A stretch of 64,000 bases of DNA, taken from positions 162,481 to 226,480 of IMG/VR virus record IMGVR_UViG_3300046323_000587, one strand, 5' to 3'. Made by a program: the position numbers and the translations under genes. Shown piece after piece: positions 3,405 to 63,096 of this stretch (position 1 is the first letter of the stretch; each line of letters opens with the position of its first letter). The notes under the pieces were generated by a model, which was not told the origin of the DNA, did not search any database, and saw only the letters and a list, made by a program, of their open reading frames with translations.

Positions 3405-4188
3405 TGTTGTCTAATTTAAATTTATATAAAGAAAATAATTTTCCTCCTTTTGAGTAAGCAGGTATTACAAATGCAGCTCCAGAAAACCCTTTTGCATAAG
3501 TATTGTAATCTTTCCACTGAGCTGTAGACAATTGATTTTTACTATTTGCTTTTGGTTTTGCTGAATATCTTCCCATATCTTGATAAGTAAAATGCAGATC
3601 TTTTGGATTTAATTCATAATCTTTAATAATTTGTTCTCCTTGTTCTTTTAAAACTTCTGGAATTCCAGATACATCTATACCTATTTGTTTACCATTTTTA
3701 TCAGTAAAGAGATAAGTTACGCTTCCTCCACTAAATCTAGAAAAATTTTGATTTCCTGTACTAGATATACTTGTTTCTTGACCTTTTTTTGTTGGAATAT
3801 AATTAGATTTTTGTCCAATTTGCCAACCTGTAGACTTTCCTTTATTATTCCAGTCTATGTTTGCAAAAGAGTTAGATCTAACTGGTAATTTACTATCGTA
3901 ACCTTCTTCGTCTAAATATTTTTTGTTATTTAAATCAATTCCTTTTATATCTTTAAATTTTTTATACCTAACTAAATATTCTCCATTGAGTTGTTTTTTA
4001 TGTTGAGCTATATAAGTATCGGGAGTTTGTGGAATATCTGGTAAAAATATATCTTCGTACTTAGATTTTACTGGACCACTTTTCCAATCACTATGTTGTT
4101 TTGTATTTTTTTGATTTGGTGTAATGTCTCCGTCCATAATAAAATGAGATACACCTAATACATTATTTAATGTACTATCTTTAGACAT
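3397..4188 (-). CDS. Hypothetical cargo-cassette protein (probably the 3' part of a disrupted longer gene starting at 4862)
   Basis: 263-aa ORF ending in YSKGGKLFSLYKFK tag; the upstream sequence reads as protein in shifted frames. Confidence 0.5.
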   Translation of the reverse strand: MSKDSTLNNVLGVSHFIMDGDITPNQKNTKQHSDWKSGPVKSKYEDIFLPDIPQTPDTYIAQHKKQLNGEYLVRYKKFKDIKGIDLNNKKYLDEEGYDSKLPVRSNSFANIDWNNKGKSTGWQIGQKSNYIPTKKGQETSISSTGNQNFSRFSGGSVTYLFTDKNGKQIGIDVSGIPEVLKEQGEQIIKDYELNPKDLHFTYQDMGRYSAKPKANSKNQLSTAQWKDYNTYAKGFSGAAFVIPAYSKGGKLFSLYKFKLDNND

Positions 4189-4862
4189 TTCGTTTTAATT
4201 TAGGTAATACAATTGTTCTTCCTCCTGTAGAGTTATCAAAAGTTCTTTTAAAAGAGTGTAATTCTCCATTTTTATCTTTAGCAACTCTTAACAATTCATA
4301 AGATTCTCTATATTTCTCTTCAGGTGTTTTTGAATTTGATTTTGAGTTTAGTTTTGAATCTGATTTTGAATTGTTGTTAGAAGTAGATTTTTTAGGCTCT
4401 ACTTTAATTAATTTTGATCCTCATCTTTTGTAGTCAATTTATCTCACCCTCGTTTCAATCCTCCTACAACAACAGTAGCGTTATCAGGAGTAAATATCGA
4501 AGTAACTCTATTTACAAATGAAGGTTCTTGATCAGTTTTGCTTGAATTTTTATTCTCGTTTTGAGAGATAAAACTATTTTCTGTAGAACTTTGTTTAAAA
4601 TTGTTTTGAGTGTTTGGTAGTCTATTAAGAGTAATAGGAGTAGTTTTTTGTCTATTTAAAATAGATTTATTTAATTCTAATCTATTTTTATTTGTGTTTT
4701 CTAAATTATTTTGTTTTAGATAATCTTGGTAAGCTTTTTCTGTTTTTGGTCCCCAAGCTCCATTTATTTTTACACCTAAAACAGACTGTATTTTTTTATT
4801 TTTTCAACACCATTTTCATTTATTTTGCCATTATTTTGAAACTTTTCTATAAATTTTTTCAT
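4189..4862 (-). pseudogene. Disrupted 5' part of a cargo gene with a peptidoglycan-binding-like motif
   Basis: ATG 4862 MKKFIEKFQNNGKI; frameshift in A-runs near 4790-4805 into KIQSVLGVKINGAWGPKTEKAYQDY; in-frame TGA at 4444-4446; further shifts near 4415 and 4190. Confidence 0.55.
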
Positions 4863-26087: not shown

Positions 26088-28412
26088 TTACCAAGAAACA
26101 TTTTTAACTTCTTTATCTTTTCCACCATTAACTGCTTGAATTTTTTCTATTTCATTACGTTGTTTCTCAGCATCAGTCTTAGCTTGTAAATTTTTTTCTT
26201 TTAATTCTTTATCGTGTGCTAATTTAGTTTCAGTTGTAATAACTTTTCTTTCTTGTAATGATAATTCTTTTGCTTTAGTGTCTAAATCTAATTTTTTCAA
26301 TTTCTCTAGTTCTTTATTAGTTTCTTCCATTTGTTTGTTAATTTGTTCAAGTTGTTGTTTCATTTGTTCTAATTCAGAATTTTCTTTAGCTTTTTTCTTA
26401 TTCAAAATAGTAGATTTCATTTTAGATACAGAATTAGTTGTAACTAATTCTAAAGCTAAATCCATATCAAGAGTTCCATTTTGTGCAAATGGTTGAATAA
26501 ATTGTTCTAGTTTTGCCAGCATAGTTTCTTCTTGACCTGAATCAGATACATAAACAGAATAAGAAGATAACTTAAATAAGTTATTTATTGAATAAATTTT
26601 TTGTTTGGTTCCTAAAAGATAAGCTCCTTTCTGACCTATTTCATAAGATATTCTTGATAATTCTAATAGATCTGTTAATAGACATTCAGTAACTCTATCA
26701 ATAGATGTGAACCAAGTTTTAGTAGAAAGACTTGTTTGCATTAAAGCTTGTTTAGTTACAGCAGCTCCATCACGTTCTTCCATTTGCCCCATCATTTGTC
26801 TATTTACACCTGTAATATCAGCAGCAAGAGCTTCTAATTGTTCTAGTATTTGATTACAAGCTTGAATAAAATTCAGGTCCACATTTGAAGGATAATCTTG
26901 AATGGAAGCATTTTGTCCTCCTTGAAGAATACCTTCTTGAGAAGAATCCATAAGATAAATATTAGCATTTTTACGATATTGAAGAACTTTTTCAAGACGT
27001 TCTTCCATTGTACCGCCTAAAAGTTTTGGTAAAGAAGCTACATCAATAGCTAAACCTCCTAACCTAAATTGAGATTCTGCTTGTTTTCTAAGATATAAAG
27101 TAATGTCGTAATCATCTTGAATTTGTTTTAATAATAAAACCATTGATTCAGGTTTAGTAGAATTTACATTTGCTTGTATAATTCCGTTATAAGAAAGAGT
27201 ACATTTATCAGGAAAATCAAGATCTCTTACAACATAAGGACTTTTTCTTAATTTAAGATATATACCAGCTTCTCCACCAATACGATAGCCTTCGTAACGA
27301 TCCATACGATACTTTGTTATAGTCTGACTATTTTTATCTGTAGTAATATATTCATTATTACTTAACCATTCAGAGTGATACACACAAATATATTCGTGAA
27401 AAGATTTATCTTGATACTTATATTGTTGATATTGATTTATGTTAGAATTTTCTTCATTTAATAGATTGACTGTACCTTGTTGGTATAAACCTAAATCCCA
27501 ATAGTTGTCTGTATCATAAGAAAATAAAGATAGTCGATTAGATAATTCTTTCTTTTCTTCTAATGTCATTTCAGCTCCAAATTTATTTAAAATTTCAGTT
27601 TTAGTCATATACATTTTATAAAAACATTGATTAGATTGAGAAACTTCTTTTTTATAATCGTGTTTTTTATAATAAAAATGTCTTGGATTACAAATATCTA
27701 ATTGAGGAGTTTCACCTAAATTATCAATAAAAGTTCTATAATAGCATTGACCATAAATTAAAAGATGTTCAAATAAATCTGCTGAAAGATTTTTAATATT
27801 AAGTTTAGATACCAAATCATTAAGAACATCTTGAGAGAGGATTTCAATTTCTGAAATAAATTCTGCGTCATAATCAAGAATTAATTTATCTATTTTCTTT
27901 TGATACAATTCATCTTGAATCTTTAATTGCTTAGATTGTTCGTCAGGCTTAGCAAAATGAGTTAATAATTTTAATCTAGCTTGTATGTCTTCAACTATTT
28001 CATTATAAATCTTATTCAATAATCCAGTTTTCTTTTCTTCTTCTATTAAAGTTAAAGCATCATTACCTCTACAACTAATAAAGTAATTAAATCTATGTTG
28101 AAGATGAACTCCAACCAATACTTTTATTCTAGGTAAAATCAATGAAACAAAAGGTAATTCACCTGGATTTGCTAACCCTTCAGATTCCCATAAATAACAA
28201 AATTCATTATTATCTCTTGTTCTATTGTAATACATAGCAGCTTTCTTTAAATCTAATTTATCATAGTTTAAATCTCTAATTACTTTATCAACCATATAAA
28301 TTAAATAATTAGAAGAATTTTTTTCTTCTTCAGAAATTAACTCATTTTCGTAATAATAGTTAGAAAATGAATCTTCGTAATTATCTTGTTTAATTAACTT
28401 TTCTTTTGTCAT
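26088..28412 (-). CDS. Portal protein
   Basis: 774 aa; LI.PRIKVLVG, VYH.EW, RYEGYRIG, LSYNG, ITGVNRQMMGQ.E.RD, C-terminal coiled coil; near terminase. Confidence 0.85.
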   Translation of the reverse strand: MTKEKLIKQDNYEDSFSNYYYENELISEEEKNSSNYLIYMVDKVIRDLNYDKLDLKKAAMYYNRTRDNNEFCYLWESEGLANPGELPFVSLILPRIKVLVGVHLQHRFNYFISCRGNDALTLIEEEKKTGLLNKIYNEIVEDIQARLKLLTHFAKPDEQSKQLKIQDELYQKKIDKLILDYDAEFISEIEILSQDVLNDLVSKLNIKNLSADLFEHLLIYGQCYYRTFIDNLGETPQLDICNPRHFYYKKHDYKKEVSQSNQCFYKMYMTKTEILNKFGAEMTLEEKKELSNRLSLFSYDTDNYWDLGLYQQGTVNLLNEENSNINQYQQYKYQDKSFHEYICVYHSEWLSNNEYITTDKNSQTITKYRMDRYEGYRIGGEAGIYLKLRKSPYVVRDLDFPDKCTLSYNGIIQANVNSTKPESMVLLLKQIQDDYDITLYLRKQAESQFRLGGLAIDVASLPKLLGGTMEERLEKVLQYRKNANIYLMDSSQEGILQGGQNASIQDYPSNVDLNFIQACNQILEQLEALAADITGVNRQMMGQMEERDGAAVTKQALMQTSLSTKTWFTSIDRVTECLLTDLLELSRISYEIGQKGAYLLGTKQKIYSINNLFKLSSYSVYVSDSGQEETMLAKLEQFIQPFAQNGTLDMDLALELVTTNSVSKMKSTILNKKKAKENSELEQMKQQLEQINKQMEETNKELEKLKKLDLDTKAKELSLQERKVITTETKLAHDKELKEKNLQAKTDAEKQRNEIEKIQAVNGGKDKEVKNVSW

Positions 28413-28750: not shown

Positions 28751-29386
28751 TTACAATAAAATTTTCAATTCTTTTAAATAATCTTCTGATAAACTTCCAT
28801 TATTTAATAATTGTGCTAAACCTGTTTCAAGTAAATCAAATATTCGAGATAGTTGAACTCCTTCAATATTATCAAATAAGTGAATATAAGCAATGTGTAT
28901 ATGTTTATATAAATAATGAGCTATAAACATTGCTAAAATTTGATTGTAAGTAAGTTCTATTTTATTAGACGAAATTTTATTCTCTCTTACAAATTGTATA
29001 ACACTTTTTATTTGGTCTAATAACCTCCATTTATTAAGAGGGCAGTTATTTTCTTGACTTCTTGATTTTGCTGATAAATGACAACCACAACCTAATAAAT
29101 AACCTTCTTGTTGTAGAGACAGATATGTACCTGTTGATAAAGTTTCATAAGAAATACCTTCTTCTTTAATATAAGTAAAAAAATTAGCTATTAATTCTTC
29201 ATCAGGTATTATTTTTGATAATTTTTTATTATTACAATGCTCAGGCAAAATTCCATTTCCTTTATTATATAAAGGGCAAGTATGACAAATTGCTATTCTT
29301 TCTTTATAGAGCACTTCATCTGCTCCAAATAAACTTTTTATGTGCCCTTTTACTATTGCTGTAAGGTTTTTATAATTATTAATCAT
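28751..29386 (-). CDS. Cys-rich (Zn-binding) conserved phage protein
   Basis: RIAICHTCP...GCGCHLSAK.R.....CPLNKW. Confidence 0.6.
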   Translation of the reverse strand: MINNYKNLTAIVKGHIKSLFGADEVLYKERIAICHTCPLYNKGNGILPEHCNNKKLSKIIPDEELIANFFTYIKEEGISYETLSTGTYLSLQQEGYLLGCGCHLSAKSRSQENNCPLNKWRLLDQIKSVIQFVRENKISSNKIELTYNQILAMFIAHYLYKHIHIAYIHLFDNIEGVQLSRIFDLLETGLAQLLNNGSLSEDYLKELKILL

Positions 29387-31475
29387 ATTTTATTGTTCCA
29401 TTTTTATTTTTAGACCTATCTAAATAAGATATTTGTTTTTGTTTTTCATATTTAATTTTTACTTTAGGATCATAACCATATCTTTTATATCCATTTTCAT
29501 CTACATAAAAAGATTTTAGTTGAACAATTTTTTCATTATTTTCTTTAGGAACTAATCTCAACATTTCTAATTCTTTATCTGCTAGTTCACACAATCCTAA
29601 AGCTACAATAATATCATAATTTCCTCTTTTATCTGGATTATAGTTTGAAGCATCTACTAAAAATCTTTCAAATTTAATTTTATCACAATTATCTTCTATA
29701 TAGTTTTTTAAATGATTATCCATTAAATTATTAGTTTCACTTGTAGCTTTTGTACCAAAATCTCTTGTATTATTTGTAATTCTAAATTTATTGCTAAGAG
29801 CATTAGAAGGTGCCATAAATTTATGTGAAAAATCTCCTAGTTTGTGTTCTCTAAAATATTGATATACCATAATACGAGTTTTTTCAAGATTGATTTGACA
29901 ATTGTACCAAATAGATAATTTTAAAGCATTATCAAAACATTCTCTTTCGTCACGAGGTCTGTCACAATAATAAGCAACATAAGTATTATTGTAATCATCA
30001 TACATTGAATTAGTACGTTTTTTAATAATCATTGCAAATTCTGAATTATTTTTTGTTACAGTTAAATCTTCTCCCATATCAATACCATCAATACCAGCTA
30101 TATAAAGATTTGCAGGAGGTTCGCTATTATCTTCTCCTCTATGAGGCGGTTGTAGGATATGTATTTTACCATTTTTGTCTGAAATAAATTCACAACCTGC
30201 AATTTTTCCTTGTTTATCAAATAAAAATTCTAATCGACCTATTTTAATATTAGGTTTATTTGTAGGTTGTTCTAACCAAATTCTTTGATTAACTAATTTA
30301 TCAAGATTAAATATACAAGCTCTAATCTCTCTAAAAGCTTCATCTGGATTTAAACAATGTTCAGCAACATACTTTTGATAATCATCAGGAGATTTTAATA
30401 ATTTTTGTTCTTCTCTTATTTTTAATACATTAGATAAAGATTCTTCTTGATCAATGTTTCCAAACTTATCCATACATTTTATATTAATTTGAGTGTATGG
30501 AAAGAAAAATCCAGATTCTTTATATAAATCTCCATAAATAGAATTATCGAAAGTTTTAAAACCAAATCCTTTAGGATTACGGAATATTTCTTTTAATCCT
30601 TCAATTCCTGCTCCTATTTCACCTCCTGTACCCCAAGCTATAATTTGACCAATAAATGCACCTCCTTCTTCTACAACAGGTCGAATAACTTCAATTGCTT
30701 CTTTTGCTTTTTTAAAAGAACCAAATTCTTCAAGATGTATCTTATAAGCAGACTTACCTCTAAATTTATGTGGATTACTTGCTAACAAACCTAATATTTC
30801 TCCACCTGTTTGAGTTTCTATGTTAGATTTTTCTAGTTTTCCTGAAGCTTTTTTATGTGTAGCTGTATTTGCTCCCATTCTAGCGTGAAACATAGCCATC
30901 TCTGTTTCTTTATCAAGATAGTTTATATTAGCCCAAACAAAAGCTAAAATATTAGTTAAATATTCTTCATCAGTAGCTGCATATATTACTTTGCGATACT
31001 CTCCTTTCATATTAGGTGTTCTTATAGCATAATCTCTTGCTCCCATTGCAGCTTGTTTATAAGACCAACCAGCTCTTCTAGGTTTTAATACTATAAGATG
31101 TTTTTCTTCTTGTTCAGCTTCTTCTACAACATTAAACCAATCATAATCTAATTTCCAAAAATTAGGATTTTTGGTTATTTTTTTAGTTAGTTTTTTACCG
31201 TTTAATATATAATCTTCTTGAAGTTCTATTTGAACATAATTTAAATAGAAATAATGGTATCCAGTAATTCTAACTTCACCTATTGTATAACCATTCATAC
31301 ATTTATCAAACTCACTCAACCAAAATTCTTTATATTGTTGAGTACCTTTTTTATATAAAGAATAATACCCAGTTTTAAGTTTTTTATTTATGGCATCTTG
31401 AAATCGATGTGTATTCATTAAATAATCACCTTTAAAATAAGGTAATTCATCATTTATGGTAGTTATTATATTCAT
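29379..31475 (-). CDS. terL: Terminase large subunit
   Basis: Walker A LKPRRAGWSY, Walker B IHLEEFG, WGTGG, nuclease YIAGIDGID, N.D C-terminal motif. Confidence 0.92.
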   Translation of the reverse strand: MNIITTINDELPYFKGDYLMNTHRFQDAINKKLKTGYYSLYKKGTQQYKEFWLSEFDKCMNGYTIGEVRITGYHYFYLNYVQIELQEDYILNGKKLTKKITKNPNFWKLDYDWFNVVEEAEQEEKHLIVLKPRRAGWSYKQAAMGARDYAIRTPNMKGEYRKVIYAATDEEYLTNILAFVWANINYLDKETEMAMFHARMGANTATHKKASGKLEKSNIETQTGGEILGLLASNPHKFRGKSAYKIHLEEFGSFKKAKEAIEVIRPVVEEGGAFIGQIIAWGTGGEIGAGIEGLKEIFRNPKGFGFKTFDNSIYGDLYKESGFFFPYTQINIKCMDKFGNIDQEESLSNVLKIREEQKLLKSPDDYQKYVAEHCLNPDEAFREIRACIFNLDKLVNQRIWLEQPTNKPNIKIGRLEFLFDKQGKIAGCEFISDKNGKIHILQPPHRGEDNSEPPANLYIAGIDGIDMGEDLTVTKNNSEFAMIIKKRTNSMYDDYNNTYVAYYCDRPRDERECFDNALKLSIWYNCQINLEKTRIMVYQYFREHKLGDFSHKFMAPSNALSNKFRITNNTRDFGTKATSETNNLMDNHLKNYIEDNCDKIKFERFLVDASNYNPDKRGNYDIIVALGLCELADKELEMLRLVPKENNEKIVQLKSFYVDENGYKRYGYDPKVKIKYEKQKQISYLDRSKNKNGTIKYD

Positions 31476-46416: not shown

Positions 46417-46429
46417 TTTTGATTTTTTA

Positions 46430-47500
46430 TAAATTTTATTTTAATTATTGATTACAAATATTTCAAATATTGTTTCAATTTTTTTAATAAAATTTTTTAA
46501 AAGTTTCGAAAAATTTAAGATCTTTAAAAAATTGTTAAAATTCTTTTTATTCTTGAACAGTTTAATTAGTCTAGTTAGTCTAGTGAATTAGTAGAGTATT
46601 ACTATAATACTAGACTGTACTTACAATAGAACTATATAGAACTAGACAAAATACTAAAAGACTAGATAAAGAGAAATTTAATTAATATTGATATTAGAAT
46701 AATACCCCTGGCAGTGAATTTAATAGGAAATTTATACCCCCACTATTGAAGAATTTTATAGGAAATCAAAAAGCTATTAAAAGAGAATTACTTAAAAAAG
46801 AATTAGTTATAAGTTTAAACTATATAATCAATTTAAAATCAATTTAAAATCAATTTAAATTATTTGAGAAGTATCAATAATTGAATTATTAAAGAAAAAC
46901 TATATAAATAATAATATAGTATTTAGTTATTAAGATTTATTTTTATTATTTTTATTATTTTTATTGAATTTTATTGATGATAAATTTAATGTTGAAACTT
47001 AAAAGTTAAACTTTACATTGAAATATTAAATGAATTTTAAAATAAATTAAAAAACAATTAGTAAATAACAAGTAATAATTGAGAGGTTTTAATTTAGATA
47101 GTTGATTAAGAGATTAAAGGGACAGTTTTGATTATTAAAGTTAATTATTAAAGTTAGTTATTAAAGCTAGTTGATGGATTTAATTTAGTTAATTTAAAAA
47201 TTTAGAAACTTTAAAGAGGACTTTTATTGAGAAATTTTATTGAGAACTTTTAAGAATTAATTTTGAAGAACTTTTAGACTAATTTTAGATTAGTTTTAGA
47301 TTAGTTTTTAGACTAATTTTAGGACTTACTTTTACGATTTACTTTAGAAGATTTGAGAAGATTTTAGAAATCTAGTTTAAACTGTAATAAATGGAATATG
47401 CTTTTAAATTTAAAATTTTATTGAATTAGTTTGATAGGATGTGGATTGATTTGTAAAAGGTATAGTGTAAAGTACCCCTACCGTAGTTGGGCGCGGGAAA
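46430..47500. repeat. Low-complexity divergent spacer with short tandem repeats (candidate genome-end/packaging/control region)
   Basis: AATTTAAAATC x2-3, TTATTAAAG x3, TTTTAGA(C/T)TA x4-5, TACCCC x3; separates minus-strand late from plus-strand early genes. Confidence 0.6.
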
Positions 47501-47554
47501 GGACAGAGGTATCAACGTAGATATTCTGTTATTCTTTCTTGCCAACTTTCAAAA

Positions 47555-51227: not shown

Positions 51228-51281
51228 TAGCCTTTATTTTTTTATTTAGTGACACCACTTTAAATTAATTCTTAAAGCAAT

Positions 51282-51349
51282 GCTCTTATAGTTTAATGGA
51301 AAAATCTCTGATTATTCAGATGTTCTTGGTTCGATTCCAGGTGAGAGCA
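51282..51349 (+). tRNA. tRNA-like gene with truncated anticodon loop (pseudo-tRNA)
   Basis: Acceptor GCTCTTA/TGAGAGC, D-arm TAGTTTAATGG, T-arm CTTGG-TTCGATT-CCAGG; anticodon stem TCTGA/TCAGA closes only TTAT. Confidence 0.7.
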
Positions 51350-51374
51350 ATAAACTTTTTAATACCCCAAAACT

Positions 51375-52245: not shown

Positions 52246-53172
52246 TTATTGTTGTTTTATCATGGTGAACTTACCAGATTTGTATTTTATTAGGTTATTC
52301 TCTTTAAGGATATTCTCTAATAATTCTTTTCTGAAATAACTTTCACTCTTGTCTAGTCTTTTACAAAAAACATCAATAAAGTTTCCCATTGAAATAGGAA
52401 AAGTGATATCTATTAATATATCAAGATATTTTTGTTTCTTATTTTCCTCTGTTTCTTTGATATCAACTACTTTCTTAAACATAGTAGTCTGTTCATCAAA
52501 CTCTACAAAGAAATCAAAGCCTTTTCCCTCTCTTAATTTTGTAGACTTTATTTTATATTTATGTTTGTATTGTGCAATAGCTAATGAAGCAACACTTTTT
52601 TGTTCTAAGAATGAACCTAAGTGTCCTCTTGCTTTTGCATTAATGCCTGCGTCTTCGTTCTGATGAATTATTAATATTATAGAACAATTATAATCTTTTA
52701 TTATCTTATTTAATTCAGATAGTAGAGTGGTTGAGTTGCCTATATCATTAATATTTTCAATGAAATCTGCAAATTGGTCTATGATAATTAGATATGGTGG
52801 GAATTCTTTACAAGCACTATTCACTGAACCTAATTTATCAGGAGTATCCAAATCCCAAAACATTAATAAATCTTCTTTATCTTGACTTACTTGTTCTAAA
52901 ATCTTTAATAGTCTTTTTTGAAGATGATATTTAGACATTTCAGTAGAGAAATAAAGAATTTTTTTATCAGGAGGACAAGGTGTGTATGTTAATCCTAGAG
53001 TATCTTCACCATTAAGAAGACCTACTAACATATTCATTACTAGTCTAGATTTACCTGAACCTACTTCACCTTTTATTAAACAAAAAGAGTTAGAAGTCAA
53101 TATTTCAGATCCATCATTTTGAATTACAATAAGTGGTTGCATATAATTAGAATTTCTTGTTATGTGTTCCAT
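52246..53172 (-). CDS. AAA_25/RepA-like ATPase (helicase-like)
   Basis: Walker A GEVGSGKS, FSTEMS, Walker B LIIIDQFAD, IIHQN, RGHLGS. Confidence 0.8.
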   Translation of the reverse strand: MEHITRNSNYMQPLIVIQNDGSEILTSNSFCLIKGEVGSGKSRLVMNMLVGLLNGEDTLGLTYTPCPPDKKILYFSTEMSKYHLQKRLLKILEQVSQDKEDLLMFWDLDTPDKLGSVNSACKEFPPYLIIIDQFADFIENINDIGNSTTLLSELNKIIKDYNCSIILIIHQNEDAGINAKARGHLGSFLEQKSVASLAIAQYKHKYKIKSTKLREGKGFDFFVEFDEQTTMFKKVVDIKETEENKKQKYLDILIDITFPISMGNFIDVFCKRLDKSESYFRKELLENILKENNLIKYKSGKFTMIKQQ

Positions 53173-53914: not shown

Positions 53915-54454
53915 TTAATTCTCTATAGAACCTTTATAAAAATATTTCGAATTAAGTTGAAATATATTTCTAGATTTAGATAGAAGTAATCCTTTCTTTA
54001 CAAGGTTAGATAAAGCATTATTAAGTGTTCCCAATTTAATGTTTAGTTTACTCGCTAATATTTGTTTAAATGTTTTAATTAAAGCAAATTCAGTATTAGT
54101 AGAATACATTAACAATAATTGGCAATATAGTTTTATCTCTGGCAAAGAAAGACTAGAAGAAAAGAGTTTTAGTAAATCAGATGTAAAGATATGTGAAGGA
54201 GATTCTATTTCAGTTAAGATATTCTCTACTGTTTCTTTTAAAGCCTCTGTTGCTTCAATATTAAACCATTCACCTCTAATTTTATTAGATTGAAAATGTT
54301 TATGAAGTATTGATTCTTCAATATAAGAACCTTCAATTGTAAATAATACTTCTAATTTCTCAGAAGAACCTGTTTGTAATTGTGATAGTCTTTTGGTAAT
54401 GTTCTCTGTTACACCTATTTTGATGTGATGAGAGTTGGAGATGAAGTATATCAT
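53915..54454 (-). CDS. GIY-YIG (T5orf172/MUG113-type) nuclease fused to RepL-like wHTH
   Basis: MIYFI...IKIGVT....RL..LQTG...E..LH..F....RGEWF; C-terminal TLNNALSNLVKKGLL...FQLNSKYFYKG; start moved to ATG 54454. Confidence 0.8.
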   Translation of the reverse strand: MIYFISNSHHIKIGVTENITKRLSQLQTGSSEKLEVLFTIEGSYIEESILHKHFQSNKIRGEWFNIEATEALKETVENILTEIESPSHIFTSDLLKLFSSSLSLPEIKLYCQLLLMYSTNTEFALIKTFKQILASKLNIKLGTLNNALSNLVKKGLLLSKSRNIFQLNSKYFYKGSIEN

Positions 54455-54484
54455 AGTAAATTTTATTATGTTAAACACTATATA

Positions 54485-54492
54485 CAAATATA
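54485..54492 (-). promoter_or_regulatory. Bacteroidota sigma-A -7 element (TATATTTG)
   Basis: Exact TAnnTTTG 31 nt upstream of GIY-YIG start. Confidence 0.55.
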
Positions 54493-54681: not shown

Positions 54682-55521
54682 ATGAATATAAGTAAATTAA
54701 AGCCAGGAATGGTAATCAAGAATTACAAAGAATTATGTGAATTGTTAGAAGAGAAAGTGAAAAATGGTGCAGCTAAAGTGTATCAAATGAAATTATTTGA
54801 TACATTAGTAAAATATAAGAAAGTAAAATATAGTTTTCATATTGAAGAAATCTATAAAACACCCACCAAATTGCTGAATAAAAGAAACATATCTACAAAA
54901 AGATTTACAATTAAATCAAGATTTTCTAACTATAAATTATTTCTTTGTAACGAGTCCAACAAAGATTTATCTTGTAGATCAATAGAGAAAATCAAATTTA
55001 GATGTCAAAACTGTTTCGCTTTAATTAATAAAAAAATTTGTAATGTTTTAAGAAAAAGTGAACCTATTTGTAATAATTGTAAAGCAGAACTAAACTTAGC
55101 AAAATTGTCTATGTATGAAAGAAAAATATTTAACGAATTAAAATTATTTAATTTGTGTTTTGATAGAGAAGTTTTAATTGATGATCTTAAAACTTCTAAT
55201 GGAGCATATAGGTTCGATTTTGTAATATATAAAAACAAGATTCCTTATGTAATAGAATATGACGGAGAGTTTCACGATATAACAGAATCTATAAAAATAA
55301 ATGATTTAATAAAAACTAAATATTGTCAAGAAAAAGGAATAGAGTTATTAAGAATAAACTACAAAGAAAAACTTAATTGGAAATCAATATTATACGAATT
55401 TTTAGCTAAACATAACATTTGTAATATTGATAGTTTAGTAATCTCTTTGTCAGAAGAAAAAGAAAAATTATTAGAAAGAATAAAAGAAATTGAGTTTGTT
55501 TTAATAAAGTATAAAATGTGA
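54682..55521 (+). CDS. Putative homing endonuclease: Zn ribbon + DUF559/Vsr-like PD-(D/E)XK domain
   Basis: CQNC...CNNC; YRFDFVI, IEYDGEFH, ND..KTKYC..KGI.LLRI.Y. Confidence 0.8.
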   Translation: MNISKLKPGMVIKNYKELCELLEEKVKNGAAKVYQMKLFDTLVKYKKVKYSFHIEEIYKTPTKLLNKRNISTKRFTIKSRFSNYKLFLCNESNKDLSCRSIEKIKFRCQNCFALINKKICNVLRKSEPICNNCKAELNLAKLSMYERKIFNELKLFNLCFDREVLIDDLKTSNGAYRFDFVIYKNKIPYVIEYDGEFHDITESIKINDLIKTKYCQEKGIELLRINYKEKLNWKSILYEFLAKHNICNIDSLVISLSEEKEKLLERIKEIEFVLIKYKM

Positions 55522-57727: not shown

Positions 57728-58978
57728 ATGAAAAATCTTGTTTTAATTCTCGTATTTGTATTGTCTTTTGTAGCGAATTCTTTTGCTCAGACAGTTTCAA
57801 CAATTAATTTTTCTTCTAATTCTGCTGTATTGAAAAACACAGTAATGAATTTGGAATTGACTGCAACTTCTTCTATCACTGTAATCGGACATACTGATAG
57901 CAGAGGTTCAGAAGAATACAACTTAGCTTTGTCTTTAAGAAGAGCTGAGGAAGTGAAGTCGCATTTGGTATCATTAGGTTATTCTGCTGACTTAATCACT
58001 GTAATTGGAAAAGGAGAATCTCAACCTTTATCTGATAATTCAAGTGTCCAAGGTAGAGCAACTAATAGAAGAGTAGAAATCGTAGTTTCAAGTTCAACTT
58101 CAACTTCAACTATTGAAGATATTATTAATGGAAATAGCAACTCTGATCAAGTTACTTCTTCTATTGATAATGTTTCTAGTATTTCTAGTGTTGTAGTAGA
58201 CTCTTCTTCAATCACTTCTTTGAAAAACTCTTTTATTACAGTTGCAAATGTAATTTCAGATACAATTCATATCGAAGTAGTTGAATCAGAAACTACACCA
58301 GAAGACTATTATGCAATGTATGATTCTTTAATCAAATTGCATAGCGATTCAGTGAAAACTGTAATTGTTCACGAGACTTTTTATTCTTATGAACAAGAAA
58401 AAGTGGTTAAAAAAGCATTTAAAGACTCAGTTGCTAATGAGAAACGTACTCGTAAAGCAATTTATAAAGATTCTTTGAGTTCTTTGAAAGACCAATTGAA
58501 AGCATCAAAAGAGTCAGGAGATCTTGGTTTAGCATTTTGGACAAGAAGTCAAATAGCTATGTTAAAAGCTACTTACTTTAAAAATGATTATGATCCTAAA
58601 GGATTTTTTACTTACTATGAGTATATTCCTTGCTATCCTAATGTATCTACATTAGATTTGAATATTCATAGAATTTTGAATTATTCCCCTTTAGTATATC
58701 CAATTGAGTATGCAGCTCAAGGAATTAAAGCTTTGGCTCATTCTTCATTGAAATCTCGTGCTAGATATCTTGCAATGAAAGCGTTACAACACGGTAGCTA
58801 CCAAGCTTATATTAATATTCGTACAAACCATTATGGTGGGTCGAATATGATTAAATATGCTAAGAAGTATCGTAATCTTTGTAAAGCCAATAAAGGCAAA
58901 GCAGAGATTAAGGATGTGAAAGATGTAGCAACTTTTGAACAAAATGTAGAAGTCTCTTCATCAGATAATGAAAAATAG
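57728..58978 (+). CDS. Secreted OmpA-like peptidoglycan-binding protein with Ser-rich linker and unknown C-terminal domain
   Basis: Signal peptide MKNLVLILVFVLSFVANSFA; IGHTDSRGSEEYNLALSLRRA...GKGESQP...NRRVEI. Confidence 0.88.
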   Translation: MKNLVLILVFVLSFVANSFAQTVSTINFSSNSAVLKNTVMNLELTATSSITVIGHTDSRGSEEYNLALSLRRAEEVKSHLVSLGYSADLITVIGKGESQPLSDNSSVQGRATNRRVEIVVSSSTSTSTIEDIINGNSNSDQVTSSIDNVSSISSVVVDSSSITSLKNSFITVANVISDTIHIEVVESETTPEDYYAMYDSLIKLHSDSVKTVIVHETFYSYEQEKVVKKAFKDSVANEKRTRKAIYKDSLSSLKDQLKASKESGDLGLAFWTRSQIAMLKATYFKNDYDPKGFFTYYEYIPCYPNVSTLDLNIHRILNYSPLVYPIEYAAQGIKALAHSSLKSRARYLAMKALQHGSYQAYINIRTNHYGGSNMIKYAKKYRNLCKANKGKAEIKDVKDVATFEQNVEVSSSDNEK

Positions 58979-59019
58979 TTGTTGACAAATAATTCTTGAA
59001 AAAGAGTTTTTGAAAAAGA

Positions 59020-59416
59020 GCTTCTCATTATCTGATTGTCCATTAAAACCAGTACAAAGTATCTTACAAAATATCTAATACCAATAACTAATTCATTCAA
59101 TCAAATCCTTTTTATTTCTCTTTAATTCTCTTTATTTCTCTTCTCTTAATATTACTATCATCTATTGAATGAAATCTTGAAATCCTGCCCTTGTTGTGAA
59201 ACATTAGTAAAAGATTTCAAGATTGGTTATTCTATCCTTCTACTATTAGAAGTTGATTAAAGAATAATTAGAGTTTAATTATTGGTAATGATATTGAGAT
59301 TGATAAGAATGGAAGATTGAATGGTAAAATTGAATGGTAAAATGGTTTGGTTTGATTGAGTTGGTTATGAAGTATTTGATATATTTGATATATTGTGTTG
59401 GTTTTAGTGAAGAAGC
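59020..59416 (+). ncRNA. Long rod-like fold-back RNA candidate (~370-400 nt)
   Basis: Nested helices with many G-U pairs, e.g. 59041-57/59393-409, and perfect 12 bp 59173-84/59213-24. Confidence 0.55.
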
Positions 59417-59748
59417 AAAGTTTAAATTATTATTCATTTTTAATTCAATTGTTTATGTTTAATTTAGTTTATTTAGAGGCATTTAAAATGCTAAAAGAAC
59501 ACGGAATCAACCTTAAAACTATTTCTGAACAAGAATTAGAAAATAGATTGAGCCTGCATCCAGATTTGAGTAAAGCTGTTGATATTGTAAGATACTACCA
59601 TTCCTTTGTAGACTTACTTATTGTATATAGAAGAGCTTTATCATCTGGAAATTCCACAATTGCAAATAAATCAGAAAAAATTTTGAAGGAAGAATATCCT
59701 AATGAGTTTGATGAGTATTGCAATAGTTTGAATCAAAAATTCGAGTAA
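59395..59748 (+). CDS. Hypothetical protein (likely start ATG 59455)
   Basis: ORF; TATATTTG at 59380-87 upstream. Confidence 0.5.
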   Translation: MLVLVKKQSLNYYSFLIQLFMFNLVYLEAFKMLKEHGINLKTISEQELENRLSLHPDLSKAVDIVRYYHSFVDLLIVYRRALSSGNSTIANKSEKILKEEYPNEFDEYCNSLNQKFE

Positions 59749-60175
59749 GAAATAAGAGTTAATCTTCTCTTTAAAAAGATACCTTATATAATATAATTAA
59801 TATTTAATAATGATTTGATTCAACTTCTTTCGTGTTGAATTGCAAGTCTATTTCTTATTAATTCACTGTTATTTAAGAAGAAGTTATACCAATAATCCAC
59901 TTTAAAAGGATTTCTTAGGTTGTAGTTCAACCGTTTATAGATTTTAATTGTAGTCTCTTTTAAAAATATTTAAAGAAACTCTTAAAATTGAAAGAAAACA
60001 AAACTCTTCTATTACAAGTAGAAGTAAATACTAATCTTGTAGGTGTGATGATTTATACCTTAAAAACAATCCGAAATTTGAATACACAATCTTATCTTAG
60101 AGTAGCTAGTAACTACTATTCCGAAAAGGATAAACTTCTATAAGACTGTTGAAGTATTCAGTACAAAAATATATA

Positions 60176-60244
60176 AGAATAGATTGGTTATATTAATGTT
60201 TAATACACATTGATATAAGTGGGTCCGATTCCCATACTATTCTC
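60176..60244 (+). ncRNA. D-armless tRNA-like element 1
   Basis: AGAATAG/CTATTCT stem, ATTGG linker, 12-bp stem with 7-nt loop, T-arm GTGGG-TCCGATT-CCCAT. Confidence 0.55.
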
Positions 60245-60360
60245 TAAAATGCGCTGAATACTAGAAATAGTTTTGATTTTTACTACAAAATTTTAACAAT
60301 CAAAACTATTTCGATATTTTTATGTAAAAAAATTATAATTTAATTCAAACCAAATAGTTT

Positions 60361-60861
60361 ATGAAAATAGATGCAAAACAAAAAATAAGTTTACTTGGAA
60401 TTAGTCCTTTAACTACAAAAGAATTTTTTAAAATTCCAGTTTCTAATATAGAAACAAAAGAATATACGAAAGAATATTTTGATGAAGAAATTATTTTTAT
60501 TCCTAAGTATATTTATGTAGAAAGAAATGAGTCTGTCAGATATCACAAATCTACATTTAGTAAAAAAGTAATTAGTAGTTTGTCTCCAATTAGTTGTAAA
60601 ATGTTTTTATATTTAATGAGTAATATTAAAAGAAATGCGGATTTTGTAGATATTGATATTAAACATTGTATGAAATGGATGCAAATAACTTCTATAAACA
60701 CATATAAAAAAGCATTAAAAGAAATAATATCTAATATAATAATTGTTCCTACAAAAGAAACAAATGTTTATTGGATTAATCCCGATGTGTTTTATAATGG
60801 TAATAGAATCAAACATTTTCCTGATAATGTTGATATTATTCAAGATATGTCAAGAGGATAA
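60361..60861 (+). CDS. RepL-like winged-HTH protein
   Basis: KMFLYLM...SINTYKKALKEI...YWINPDVFYNG. Confidence 0.7.
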   Translation: MKIDAKQKISLLGISPLTTKEFFKIPVSNIETKEYTKEYFDEEIIFIPKYIYVERNESVRYHKSTFSKKVISSLSPISCKMFLYLMSNIKRNADFVDIDIKHCMKWMQITSINTYKKALKEIISNIIIVPTKETNVYWINPDVFYNGNRIKHFPDNVDIIQDMSRG

Positions 60862-62292: not shown

Positions 62293-63096
62293 ATGAAAAC
62301 CATCACAATCCCTCAAGAAATAGTTGATACTTTATTGTGTCAAACTATTCAGTTTCATAAGTTGAGTAACGAAGATTTTACTTTATTGCAAGAATTTATT
62401 TCTTCAATTCAAGGTAAAGAATTAATCGTAACTCCTATGAACGGTTCTATTGTAGCTAGATTGTTAAACACAATTTACTATAATATGGAAAAAATTTCTG
62501 GTAAGATTGACAGAGAAAACTTCTTAATTCGAGATGCACAAGGTTTGAAAAGAGAATTTATTTCTGAACAAGACTTGGATTCTGTTTTTGTACAAAAAGA
62601 TTTGAAAGGAGTTTACACGGTAAACTTGGATTTCTTAGGTCTTGATGACTATAATAGAAGACGAGCTGAAAAAGATGTGTATCTTTCTGGTGATGTAGTA
62701 TACTCTATTTATTGGAGTATTCTAAGTAAACTTAAAGATGTAATGGCTTTCTTTAATGGTTATTTAACTAGAAAAGAGCTATTATCTTTTCCTTCTTTGC
62801 CTTTCGAAGATTTCTTTTACGGAAAAAGTATTTCAAAGGAAATGTTGAAAGTATTACAAGAAAATGTAGATAATCTAAACTATAATTCTAAATATTTTCA
62901 AGATTCTTCTATGGAAGTTTCCTCAGATAATTATCTTCAAGACGGTATTAGATCAGAAAAAGACTTTAAAGAAATGTTAGAAAATCTTTATTGGGCTTAT
63001 TTTGGTGTAGAGAACCGAGAAGAAAATGGATTGATGTGGGCCAGATGGGACGAATTGGAAGTCGCAGAAAATCAAATTGATTTGTTCGCTTTATAA
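62293..63096 (+). CDS. Hypothetical protein
   Basis: 267-aa ORF; ends QIDLFAL (resembles the QL[SD]LF beta-clamp motif). Confidence 0.65.
   Translation: MKTITIPQEIVDTLLCQTIQFHKLSNEDFTLLQEFISSIQGKELIVTPMNGSIVARLLNTIYYNMEKISGKIDRENFLIRDAQGLKREFISEQDLDSVFVQKDLKGVYTVNLDFLGLDDYNRRRAEKDVYLSGDVVYSIYWSILSKLKDVMAFFNGYLTRKELLSFPSLPFEDFFYGKSISKEMLKVLQENVDNLNYNSKYFQDSSMEVSSDNYLQDGIRSEKDFKEMLENLYWAYFGVENREENGLMWARWDELEVAENQIDLFAL

What the first reader, a model, noticed from the sequence alone, without database searches (positions are those of the whole stretch)
59020..59416. ~370-nt rod-like fold-back with strand-specific G-U pairs
Seen: nested helices CATTAAAACCAGTACAA/TTGTGTTGGTTTTAGTG, CAAA-ATATC-AATAC/GTATT-GATAT-TTTG, ATAACTAATTCA/TGAGTTGGTTAT, TCTTAATATTACTATCA/TGGTAATGATATTGAGA and AATCTTGAAATC/GATTTCAAGATT. 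The 5' arm is C-rich, the 3' arm G-rich, and deviations are mostly G-U. That pattern fits selection on a plus-strand single-stranded structure rather than a DNA palindrome. Inference: large ncRNA, RNase III substrate or single-strand origin-like element.
Basis: partly seen in the sequence, partly recalled or inferred. Interest (0 to 1): 0.65.

Follow-up and report, generated by a model that had tools for sequence, protein, structure and literature searches.

The report
Long strand-biased hairpin RNA in phage
A 370-base stretch between two genes of a large freshwater crAss-like phage folds into an unusually stable rod-shaped hairpin, which is most likely a structured non-coding RNA; it is real and unusual, but it has no known relatives and its job is not established.

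Summary
The fold-back is real. As RNA, the + strand of 59020-59416 folds at -111.5 kcal/mol (z -8.3) and the - strand at -79.4 (z -4.5). In wider context the rod proper is 59041-59410. It is preceded by a separate hairpin (58960-59036) and capped by two small hairpins.

It is the strongest fold-back in the whole 226-kb genome, which belongs to a distant crAss-like jumbo phage from freshwater. The 5' arm has no G for 107 nt and the 3' arm no C for 172 nt; these are the longest such runs in the genome. 21 of 22 G/C pairs have C on the 5' arm.

Non-Watson-Crick oppositions favour types tolerated in + strand RNA: 12 G.U and 10 U.U, against 4-7 C.A and 2 A.A. With DNA energy parameters the strand difference nearly disappears.

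The stretch is non-coding in all six frames. Environmental variants differ about half as much here as in the flanking genes. No Rfam family matched, no homologue was found, and no RNA data exist.

Best reading: a + strand structured RNA, either an intercistronic processing or stability hairpin or a stable non-coding RNA. A single-stranded-DNA element and a DNA-level palindrome are weaker rivals. The function is inferred, not shown.

The parts
57728..58978 (+). Upstream gene: 416-aa protein with an N-terminal OmpA-family domain. Its stop codon lies inside the 5' flanking hairpin.
   Evidence: Pfam PF00691 E 3.6e-16. Only the OmpA domain has relatives.
58960..59036 (+). Separate 5' flanking hairpin. 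It has a perfect 12-bp stem (ATCAGATAATGA / TCATTATCTGAT), and its loop holds four 14-nt tandem repeats (58969-59025).
   Evidence: Inverted repeat I2, fold in 511-nt context, tandem repeats.
59041..59172 (+). 5' arm of the rod, built almost only of A, C and U. It is G-free over 59060-59166 and contains 10-nt tandem repeats at 59111-59142. On its own it is almost unstructured.
   Evidence: The arm alone folds at -4.4 kcal/mol, weaker than 99% of same-length genome segments.
59173..59224 (+). Apical hairpin A: a perfect 12-bp stem with an inner small stem-loop. It is the only part with mixed G and C.
   Evidence: An environmental variant has an 8-nt insertion here.
59225..59269 (+). Apical hairpin B, the second branch of the forked tip.
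   Evidence: Variant indels at 59242-59244 and a loop change at 59245.
59270..59410 (+). 3' arm of the rod, built only of A, G and U; the C-free run spans 59244-59415. Its 13-nt tandem repeats at 59307-59343 pair with the 10-nt repeats of the 5' arm, leaving regular 2-3-nt G/U bulges.
59455..59748 (+). Downstream orphan gene: 97 aa from the ATG at 59455, or 86 aa from the ATG at 59488. It starts 45-78 nt after the rod.
   Evidence: ORF list. Only itself found in 5.8 billion proteins. No Pfam or PHROG family. Atlas structure look-alikes uninformative.
60361..60861 (+). Context: a 166-aa protein with a borderline RepL (plasmid replication protein) match, preceded by a 612-nt non-coding gap.
   Evidence: Pfam PF05732 E 4.5e-4, 20.2 bits against a cut-off of 20.3. 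Seven distant relatives, each behind a 0.5-1 kb gap.

Best explanation
The element is a cis-encoded, + strand structured RNA: a 370-nt imperfect hairpin (quasi-rod) transcribed with its flanking + strand genes in the small-gene, early-type block of a crAss-like jumbo phage.

Proposed working, all inferred:
1. The G-free 5' arm cannot fold on itself. It stays open until the C-free 3' arm is made, so the long-range rod forms reliably.
2. The 17+5-bp basal helix is long enough for a double-strand-specific RNase of the host (RNase III type). Cutting there would uncouple the upstream OmpA-like message from the downstream messages and leave each with a protective stem.
3. The released rod has helices of only 4-12 bp, broken by mismatches and regular G/U bulges. 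It would therefore resist further cutting and could persist as a stable non-coding RNA or protein-binding scaffold.

Shown: the structure, its uniqueness, its RNA-specific strand bias, its non-coding status, and its lower divergence than neighbouring genes. Not shown: transcription, cleavage, any partner.

My odds: about 0.55 that it is a functional + strand RNA structure, and about 0.3 for the specific processing and stable-RNA mechanism.
For: - RNA fold z -8.3 on + and -4.5 on -; the centroid is close to the MFE.
- The strand asymmetry is 32 kcal/mol with RNA parameters but 5.5 with DNA parameters.
- 12 G.U and 10 U.U against 4-7 C.A and 2 A.A.
- 21 C-G against 1 G-C pair, and the longest G-free and C-free runs of the genome.
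- The 5' arm alone is nearly unstructured.
- Top fold-back of the genome by two independent scans, and the best-folding intergenic gap.
- All six frames carry multiple TAA, TAG and TGA stops.
- Both flanking genes are on the + strand.
- Environmental variants differ at 6.0% of positions in the element against 12.6% in the flanking coding sequence, Fisher p 2e-5.
- Of the four visible variant changes, 59276 U>C turns a G.U into G-C, 59245 lies in a loop, and 59324 deletes a bulged base.
- Precedent: in the crAss-like phage phi14:2, long intergenic regions near an OmpA-domain gene are transcribed early and abundantly as non-coding RNAs of unknown function (bioRxiv 10.1101/2020.03.07.982082).
Against: - There are no RNA reads: all six runs holding the sequence are DNA metagenomes.
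- There is no assembled homologue, so no covariation test was possible.
- Sense strands in this genome generally fold better than antisense strands, so part of the asymmetry is a composition effect.
- The - strand is also significantly structured.
- A 370-nt rod is far longer than needed for an RNase III site.
- No convincing promoter or terminator flanks it; promoter-like sites are at chance level.
- The variant comparison is biased, because only pieces at least 80% alike were laid, and most differences were not listed.
- One variant contig appears to skip 58952-59089, which would remove the base of the 5' arm.
- The phi14:2 intergenic regions are not rod-like.
Confidence: 0.5

Rival explanations
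1. It is a single-stranded-DNA fold-back. When the + strand is exposed as ssDNA, the hairpin mimics duplex DNA and serves as a priming signal (ssi or lagging-strand origin) or as an Frpo-like single-strand promoter for the downstream genes.
For: - As ssDNA the + strand still folds better than shuffles, z -5.6.
- A weak -35/-10-like pair (TTGAGT, 18 nt, TATATT, with a TG) lies in the 3' arm, pointing at the downstream ORF.
- A DnaB-like/AAA_25 ATPase gene (52246-53172) and a borderline RepL-like gene (60361-60861) are nearby.
- The virion RNA polymerase of the crAss-like phage phi14:2 strongly prefers ssDNA templates in vitro, and its early promoters have no recognisable motif.
- Frpo elements are fold-backs of comparable size upstream of ORFs.
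Against: - With DNA parameters the structure is weak: -48 kcal/mol, centroid -16.9. The + and - strands are nearly equal, -48.2 against -42.7, so the G.U and U.U bias has no DNA-level explanation.
- Promoter-like sites are no more frequent than in shuffles.
- Tailed phages deliver double-stranded DNA, and no ssDNA stage is known here.
- No blastn similarity to any plasmid, including Frpo carriers.
- Non-coding gaps next to helicase and RepL-like homologues elsewhere contain iteron-like repeats or ordinary folds, not rods.
- No DFDxD virion polymerase was recognised in the giant ORFs.
Confidence: 0.13
2. It acts at the level of double-stranded DNA or not at all. It would be a palindrome used as a protein-binding, cruciform or recombination site, or simply the decaying relic of an inverted duplication of a G-poor sequence, which would automatically give a C-poor partner arm.
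For: - Both strands fold significantly.
- The arms are about 74% complementary at DNA level and carry tandem repeats, which suggests duplication and slippage history.
- Other long G-free or C-free runs (104 and 120 nt) exist in the genome.
- The G.U against C.A count alone is only marginal, p 0.04-0.18.
- Homing-endonuclease-like genes nearby indicate a recombinogenic region.
Against: - The combined bias of G.U and U.U over C.A and A.A has p 0.002-0.015.
- There are zero C in 172 nt despite about 26% arm divergence.
- Variants diverge half as much here as in the flanking coding sequence.
- The 5' arm is depleted of self-structure.
- A long DNA palindrome is normally unstable. The one-sided wobble pattern is what would keep an RNA hairpin while weakening the cruciform (inference from general knowledge).
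Confidence: 0.17
3. It is a transcription terminator, attenuator or insulator: a very large hairpin that stops or pauses the polymerase between the OmpA-like gene and the next genes.
For: Its intercistronic position between co-directional genes, and a T-rich stretch about 20-30 nt after the rod.
Against: - There is no U-run directly after the stem, and the terminator scan found none here.
- The size is an order of magnitude above intrinsic terminators.
- The forked tip and regular bulges have no role in termination.
Confidence: 0.07

Closest known systems
Intercistronic RNase III processing hairpins of phage polycistronic mRNAs (T7 R-sites, lambda sib type); from general knowledge
   Same: An imperfect hairpin between co-directional phage genes. 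The basal helix of 17+5 bp is about two helical turns, and internal loops could limit cutting.
   Different: Those sites are about 50-70 nt; this one is 370 nt with a forked tip, three-letter arms and repeated bulged modules. No cleavage data exist. The phage encodes no RNase III or dsRBD protein of its own.
Abundant early long non-coding RNAs of crAss-like phage phi14:2 (bioRxiv 10.1101/2020.03.07.982082)
   Same: The same broad virus group (Crassvirales-like TerL). A long non-coding gap in the rightward small-gene block, close to an OmpA-domain gene. Function unknown.
   Different: No sequence similarity. The phi14:2 gaps are not rod-like and show no + strand bias, and no comparable fold-back exists anywhere in phi14:2. 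The OmpA proteins share only the domain.
Frpo/ssi single-stranded DNA promoters of conjugative plasmids (PMC11541004)
   Same: A fold-back of a few hundred nucleotides upstream of an ORF, strand-specific, with a weak -35/-10-like pair inside the stem.
   Different: The carrier is a phage, not a transferred plasmid strand. There is no sequence similarity. The DNA-parameter fold is weak and not strand-biased. The promoter match is at chance level.
6S RNA (rod-like RNA that mimics an open promoter)
   Same: A largely double-stranded rod with interruptions.
   Different: It is twice as long, has no large central bubble, and gets no Rfam 6S hit.
Engineered long-hairpin RNA constructs with G:U wobbles placed on one arm; from general knowledge
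   Same: One-sided wobble pairs keep the RNA duplex while making the DNA an imperfect palindrome.
   Different: That is a laboratory design; here the pattern is natural and combined with complete G/C segregation between the arms.
Palindromic repeat elements that are transcribed into hairpins (ERIC, Correia, other MITE-like repeats); from general knowledge
   Same: A whole-length imperfect palindrome of a few hundred bases in an intergenic position.
   Different: It is single-copy in this genome, has no terminal target duplication, and has no copies in viral, plasmid or prokaryote collections by the searches made.

Membership tests
Any Rfam family (including 6S, GOLLD, ROOL, OLE, HEARO, raiA) | Score at or above the family's gathering threshold | tested here: not met
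   In the whole window only a tRNA at 51282-51349 passed. The permissive search of 58800-60400 gave no hit on the element.
RNase III intercistronic processing site | Double-helical segment of about two turns in the transcript | tested here: met
   Basal helix of 17 bp, then an A.A mismatch, then 5 bp at 59041-59063/59388-59410.
RNase III intercistronic processing site | Lies between cistrons of one transcript | tested here: inconclusive
   The flanking ORFs are both on the + strand, but no transcript data exist.
RNase III intercistronic processing site | Cleaved by RNase III | not testable with these tools
   Needs an in vitro cleavage assay or 5'/3' end mapping.
Frpo/ssi single-strand DNA promoter | Sequence similarity to known Frpo/ssi elements | tested here: not met
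   No blastn match in 72,556 plasmids.
Frpo/ssi single-strand DNA promoter | Stable ssDNA fold-back carrying -35, -10 and UP elements in the stem | tested here: inconclusive
   DNA fold z -5.6 but only -48 kcal/mol, with a dispersed ensemble. One 9-of-12 promoter-like site at 59356-59385, with site counts equal to shuffles.
Frpo/ssi single-strand DNA promoter | The element exists as ssDNA when it acts | not testable with these tools
   The genome is a tailed-phage record (TerL and portal), and no ssDNA stage is known.
Retron msr-msd RNA | Adjacent reverse transcriptase gene | tested here: not met
   No RVT_1 match anywhere in the 226-kb record.
6S RNA | About 180-200 nt rod with a large central bubble; Rfam model | tested here: not met
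   370 nt, largest internal loop 7x4 nt near the base, no Rfam hit.
MITE-like palindromic repeats | Multiple copies in a genome | tested here: not met
   One copy in the phage genome. The host genome is unknown, so copies there were not testable.
phi14:2-type early phage lncRNA | Sequence or structure similarity to the phi14:2 intergenic RNAs | tested here: not met
   The phi14:2 gaps fold as ordinary branched structures without strand bias. There is only a positional parallel.
phi14:2-type early phage lncRNA | Abundant early transcription | not testable with these tools
   No RNA runs hold the sequence.

The most novel reading that the evidence does not exclude
The rod is a new kind of phage non-coding RNA. 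Its arms are written in two complementary three-letter alphabets (A/C/U against A/G/U), which forces a long-range quasi-duplex that escapes RNase III. It would persist through infection and act in trans, either as a decoy or sponge for a host double-stranded-RNA-binding or RNA-sensing defence protein, or as a scaffold or regulator for the phage's own transcription machinery. crAss-like virion polymerases are structurally related to RNA-interference polymerases.
Probability: 0.12. Interest if true: 0.8.

Novelty: new variant of a known kind. Interest (0 to 1): 0.45.

Why it matters
Large structured RNAs of phages are few, and most have no known function. crAss-like phages are known to make abundant early non-coding RNAs that nobody has explained.

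This element offers a clean, single-copy and very strongly predicted structure. It also has an unusual design rule: no G in one arm and no C in the other, with wobble pairs on one strand only. That rule could be tested directly for its role in folding, RNase resistance or protein binding.

If it proves to be a stable trans-acting RNA, it would add a new class to phage-host RNA biology. If it is only a processing hairpin, it is still an extreme example of a known kind. Its value is limited for now because the host is unknown, there are no relatives, and there are no expression data.

Tried and rejected
Homologue hunting, all without a usable relative:
- blastn against plasmids and phages.
- Peptide-pattern searches of IMG/VR with the three neighbouring proteins.
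- JGI metagenomes: only an unrelated OmpA-domain locus.
- GTDB genomes: nothing.
- DNA patterns from the element in IMG/VR: none. In GTDB, two 20-mer hits that align over only 21 nt in 55% GC DNA, so they are chance.
- Word-based protein searches: the OmpA-like protein matches only through its domain, the 97-aa ORF is an orphan, and the RepL-like protein has seven relatives at 30-40% identity.
- A full HMMER search with the helicase-like protein gave relatives at 40-47% identity, but their contigs are short or not syntenic and carry no rod.
- The only close IMG/VR relative (141 kb, identical TerL) ends before this region.

Other ideas tested and dropped:
- The rod as one of several similar elements: the other well-folding gaps are ordinary branched folds.
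- Hidden coding under a reassigned stop: every frame has all three stop codons.
- A retron or a phage RNase III/dsRBD partner: no RT, RNase III or dsrm domain in the genome.
- Trans targets of the apical loops: only AT-rich matches at chance level.
- A shared promoter word upstream: k-mer counts were uninformative.
- A 6-mer seed scan for rods was too noisy in this AT-rich genome and was replaced by a wobble-aware alignment scan.
- An N4- or crAss-type virion polymerase as context: the giant ORFs have no PHROG hit and no DFDxD motif.

Reads and scans:
- The reads tool showed only DNA metagenomes, so it says nothing about expression.
- Three other phage records scanned (166 kb, 56 kb and phi14:2 at 100 kb) have no comparable rod. 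This is too small a sample to claim the design is unique.

Full report
WHERE IT IS

The window is the last 64 kb of a 226,480-bp IMG/VR virus record, estimated 95% complete, with 27% G+C. The sequence is held only by freshwater DNA metagenomes.

The large terminase (window 29379-31475, - strand) and portal (26088-28412) match PHROG head and packaging families. The terminase is 28-34% identical to those of crAss-like phages of Bacteroides, Flavobacterium and Cellulophaga. The genome is therefore a distant, unusually large crAss-like phage, and its host is probably a Bacteroidota (inference).

Genes run leftward up to about 46.4 kb of the window and rightward from 47.5 kb. The rightward block continues at the start of the record and consists mostly of small orphan genes with many long gaps.

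The finding lies in a 476-nt gap of that block. Upstream is a 416-aa OmpA-domain protein gene (57728-58978). Downstream is an orphan 97-aa gene (59455-59748). About 1 kb further downstream is a gene with a borderline RepL match.

As RNA the + strand of 59020-59416 folds at -111.5 kcal/mol. Dinucleotide shuffles average -71.3 with sd 4.9, giving z -8.3. The - strand folds at -79.4, z -4.5.

In a 511-nt context the six outermost pairs give way to an independent hairpin at 58960-59036. Its perfect 12-bp stem overlaps the last codons of the upstream gene, and its loop carries four 14-nt tandem repeats. The rod proper is 59041-59410.

The rod has about 99 pairs in helices of 4-17 bp, separated by small internal loops and bulges. 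It ends in two hairpins, 59173-59224 and 59225-59269.

In the middle of the rod, three 10-nt repeats of the 5' arm pair with three 13-nt repeats of the 3' arm. The same module recurs: short helices with 2-3-nt G/U bulges on the 3' side.

HOW UNUSUAL IT IS

- It is the best-folding intergenic gap of the genome.
- On a 400-nt grid over the whole genome and both strands, no window reaches its energy. After correcting for G+C it lies 5.45 sd below expectation, against 3.7 for the next best.
- A faster wobble-aware arm-against-arm alignment scan at 60-nt steps ranks it first, with a score of 122 against a mean of 44 and sd of 11.
- The other well-folding gaps nearby are ordinary branched folds.
- The same scan of three other phage records, including phi14:2, found nothing comparable. 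The best hits there are repetitive coding sequence.

COMPOSITION RULE

The 5' arm has no G for 107 nt and the 3' arm no C for 172 nt. These are the longest such runs in the genome. The i.i.d. expectation is 0.015 and 4e-6 runs respectively.

In the rod, 21 G/C pairs have C on the 5' arm and only one has G there, p 1.1e-5.

One consequence is measurable. The 5' arm alone folds at only -4.4 kcal/mol, weaker than 99% of genome segments of equal length. The 3' arm alone is unremarkable.

I read this as a device that keeps the first-made arm open until its partner appears. That is inference. A G-poor ancestor copied in inverse orientation would also give the pattern.

WHICH STRAND, AND RNA OR DNA

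Oppositions that are not Watson-Crick are mostly of kinds that RNA tolerates on the + strand. There are 12 G.U and 10 U.U, against 4-7 C.A and 2 A.A; the range reflects ambiguous loops. Combined, p is 0.002-0.015. The G.U count alone is only marginal.

Sense strands of this genome fold better than antisense strands in general. The mean difference is 4.8 kcal/mol with sd 10.4 in the + block, so part of the asymmetry is a composition effect. Even so, a difference as large as 32 kcal/mol occurs in only 0.7% of windows.

With DNA parameters the two strands are almost equal: -48.2 (z -5.6) against -42.7 (z -3.8). The strand bias therefore has a physical meaning for RNA and little for single-stranded DNA.

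All six frames contain several TAA, TAG and TGA codons, so the stretch is non-coding under any single stop reassignment.

CONSERVATION

No assembled relative carries the region (see the Tried and rejected section). Short contigs of diverged strains in two other freshwater runs do cover parts of it.

Over the pieces listed, the element differs at 29 of 485 positions (6.0%). The flanking coding sequence differs at 199 of 1584 (12.6%), Fisher p 2e-5.

Of the four substitutions or deletions that the tool listed inside the element:
- 59276 U>C changes a G.U pair with 59167 into G-C.
- 59245 lies in a hairpin loop.
- 59324 removes a bulged G.
- 59231 U>C would break a U-A pair, unless 59263 also changed. 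That position was not listed.

Insertions cluster in the two apical hairpins. One contig seems to skip 58952-59089.

These data have limits. Only pieces at least 80% alike are laid, 108 differences were not shown, and the contigs are 150-220 nt. They suggest constraint but are not a covariation test.

WHAT IT IS NOT

- No Rfam family matches.
- The genome has no reverse transcriptase, so a retron is excluded.
- The phage encodes no RNase III or dsRBD protein.
- The element is single-copy.
- It has no similarity to plasmids, which include Frpo carriers, or to sequenced phages.

INTERPRETATION

The best-supported reading is a structured + strand RNA in an intercistronic position. The closest functional analogues are the RNase III processing and stability hairpins of phage polycistronic messages. 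The basal 17+5-bp helix would suit such an enzyme, while the short, interrupted helices further up would resist it.

The length, forked tip, repeated bulged modules and three-letter arms go well beyond what processing needs. A stable non-coding RNA with its own function is therefore a serious possibility.

A relevant precedent is the crAss-like phage phi14:2. There, long intergenic regions near the left end, close to an OmpA-domain gene, are transcribed from the earliest time point. They are more abundant than most mRNAs, stay abundant, and have no known function. Those regions are not rod-like, however, and share no sequence with this one, so the parallel is positional only.

RIVALS

A single-stranded-DNA role (priming signal or Frpo-like promoter) is kept alive by four points: nearby replication-type genes, a weak promoter-like pair in the 3' arm, the ssDNA preference of the phi14:2 virion polymerase, and the general resemblance to Frpo fold-backs. 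It is weakened by the DNA-parameter results, the chance-level promoter count, and the lack of any ssDNA stage.

A purely DNA-level palindrome or a decaying inverted duplication fits the tandem-repeat history. It does not explain the strand bias, the complete absence of C over 172 nt, or the reduced divergence. A terminator role has little support.

VERDICT

The feature is real, statistically extreme and unusual in design. It is most likely an RNA element. Its function is inferred, it has no relatives, and it cannot yet be tested by covariation or expression. I rate it moderately interesting.

Noticed in passing
window 46417-47554: The divergent junction between the leftward and rightward gene blocks is very AT-rich (15-18% G+C). 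It has a 97-nt C-free run (46901-46997), iteron-like tandem words (TTAGACTAATTTTAGATTAG... at about 47270-47320), and a strongly + biased fold (-72.8 against -40.4). The minimum of cumulative GC skew lies just before it. It is a candidate replication origin or main regulatory region.
   Followed up: partly
window 51281-51350: A tRNA gene: Rfam 50.8 bits. ARAGORN could not name its anticodon (reported as tRNA-???, anticodon 'ta').
   Followed up: no
window 59749-60360: The 612-nt non-coding gap directly upstream of the RepL-like gene holds a near-perfect 19-bp hairpin (60264-60312) and a tRNA-T-arm-like stem (60219-60235). Seven distant RepL-like homologues were found; in the three whose contigs were fetched, the gene also sits behind a 0.5-1 kb non-coding gap (loci L005, L007, L008).
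   Followed up: partly
window 53915-54487 (-) and 54682-55521 (+): Two homing-endonuclease-type genes sit next to the helicase-like gene 52246-53172: one T5orf172/MUG113 GIY-YIG-like, one HNH/DUF2726. This suggests mobile insertions in the replication module.
   Followed up: no
window 62321-62920: Inside the 267-aa ORF (62293-63096), the sense strand folds about 40 kcal/mol better than the antisense strand (-97 against -58 per 400 nt). This is among the largest strand differences in the genome.
   Followed up: no
window 58969-59025: Four 14-nt tandem repeats (consensus TGAAAAAGAGTTCT), including a TTGACA word, lie in the loop of the hairpin just upstream of the rod. They could be protein-binding sites or a promoter region.
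   Followed up: partly
window 58952-59089: One low-depth contig of run X4 joins 58951 to 59090, as if 138 nt (gene end plus the base of the 5' arm) were missing or replaced in one strain. Another X4 contig is colinear through the same place.
   Followed up: no
G000:C1:116123-138593 (outside the window): Two adjacent giant ORFs of 3,655 and 3,833 aa, plus others of 1,400-2,300 aa, have no PHROG match and no DFDxD polymerase motif. The 2,342-aa ORF carries a Dda-like helicase domain.
   Followed up: partly
L009 (phi14:2) about 1800-1850 and 4465-4500: The non-coding gaps of phi14:2 (1279-1983 and 2905-4601; the latter is the span the paper reports as highly transcribed) contain tRNA-like T-arm and acceptor words (GGTTCGAATCC...). 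Some of those RNAs may therefore be tRNA- or tmRNA-related.
   Followed up: no
L018 265-1453: A metagenomic relative of the helicase-like gene (44% identity) is preceded by a 1.2-kb gap full of short direct repeats (CGTTTTACGATT-type). This looks like an iteron origin.
   Followed up: no
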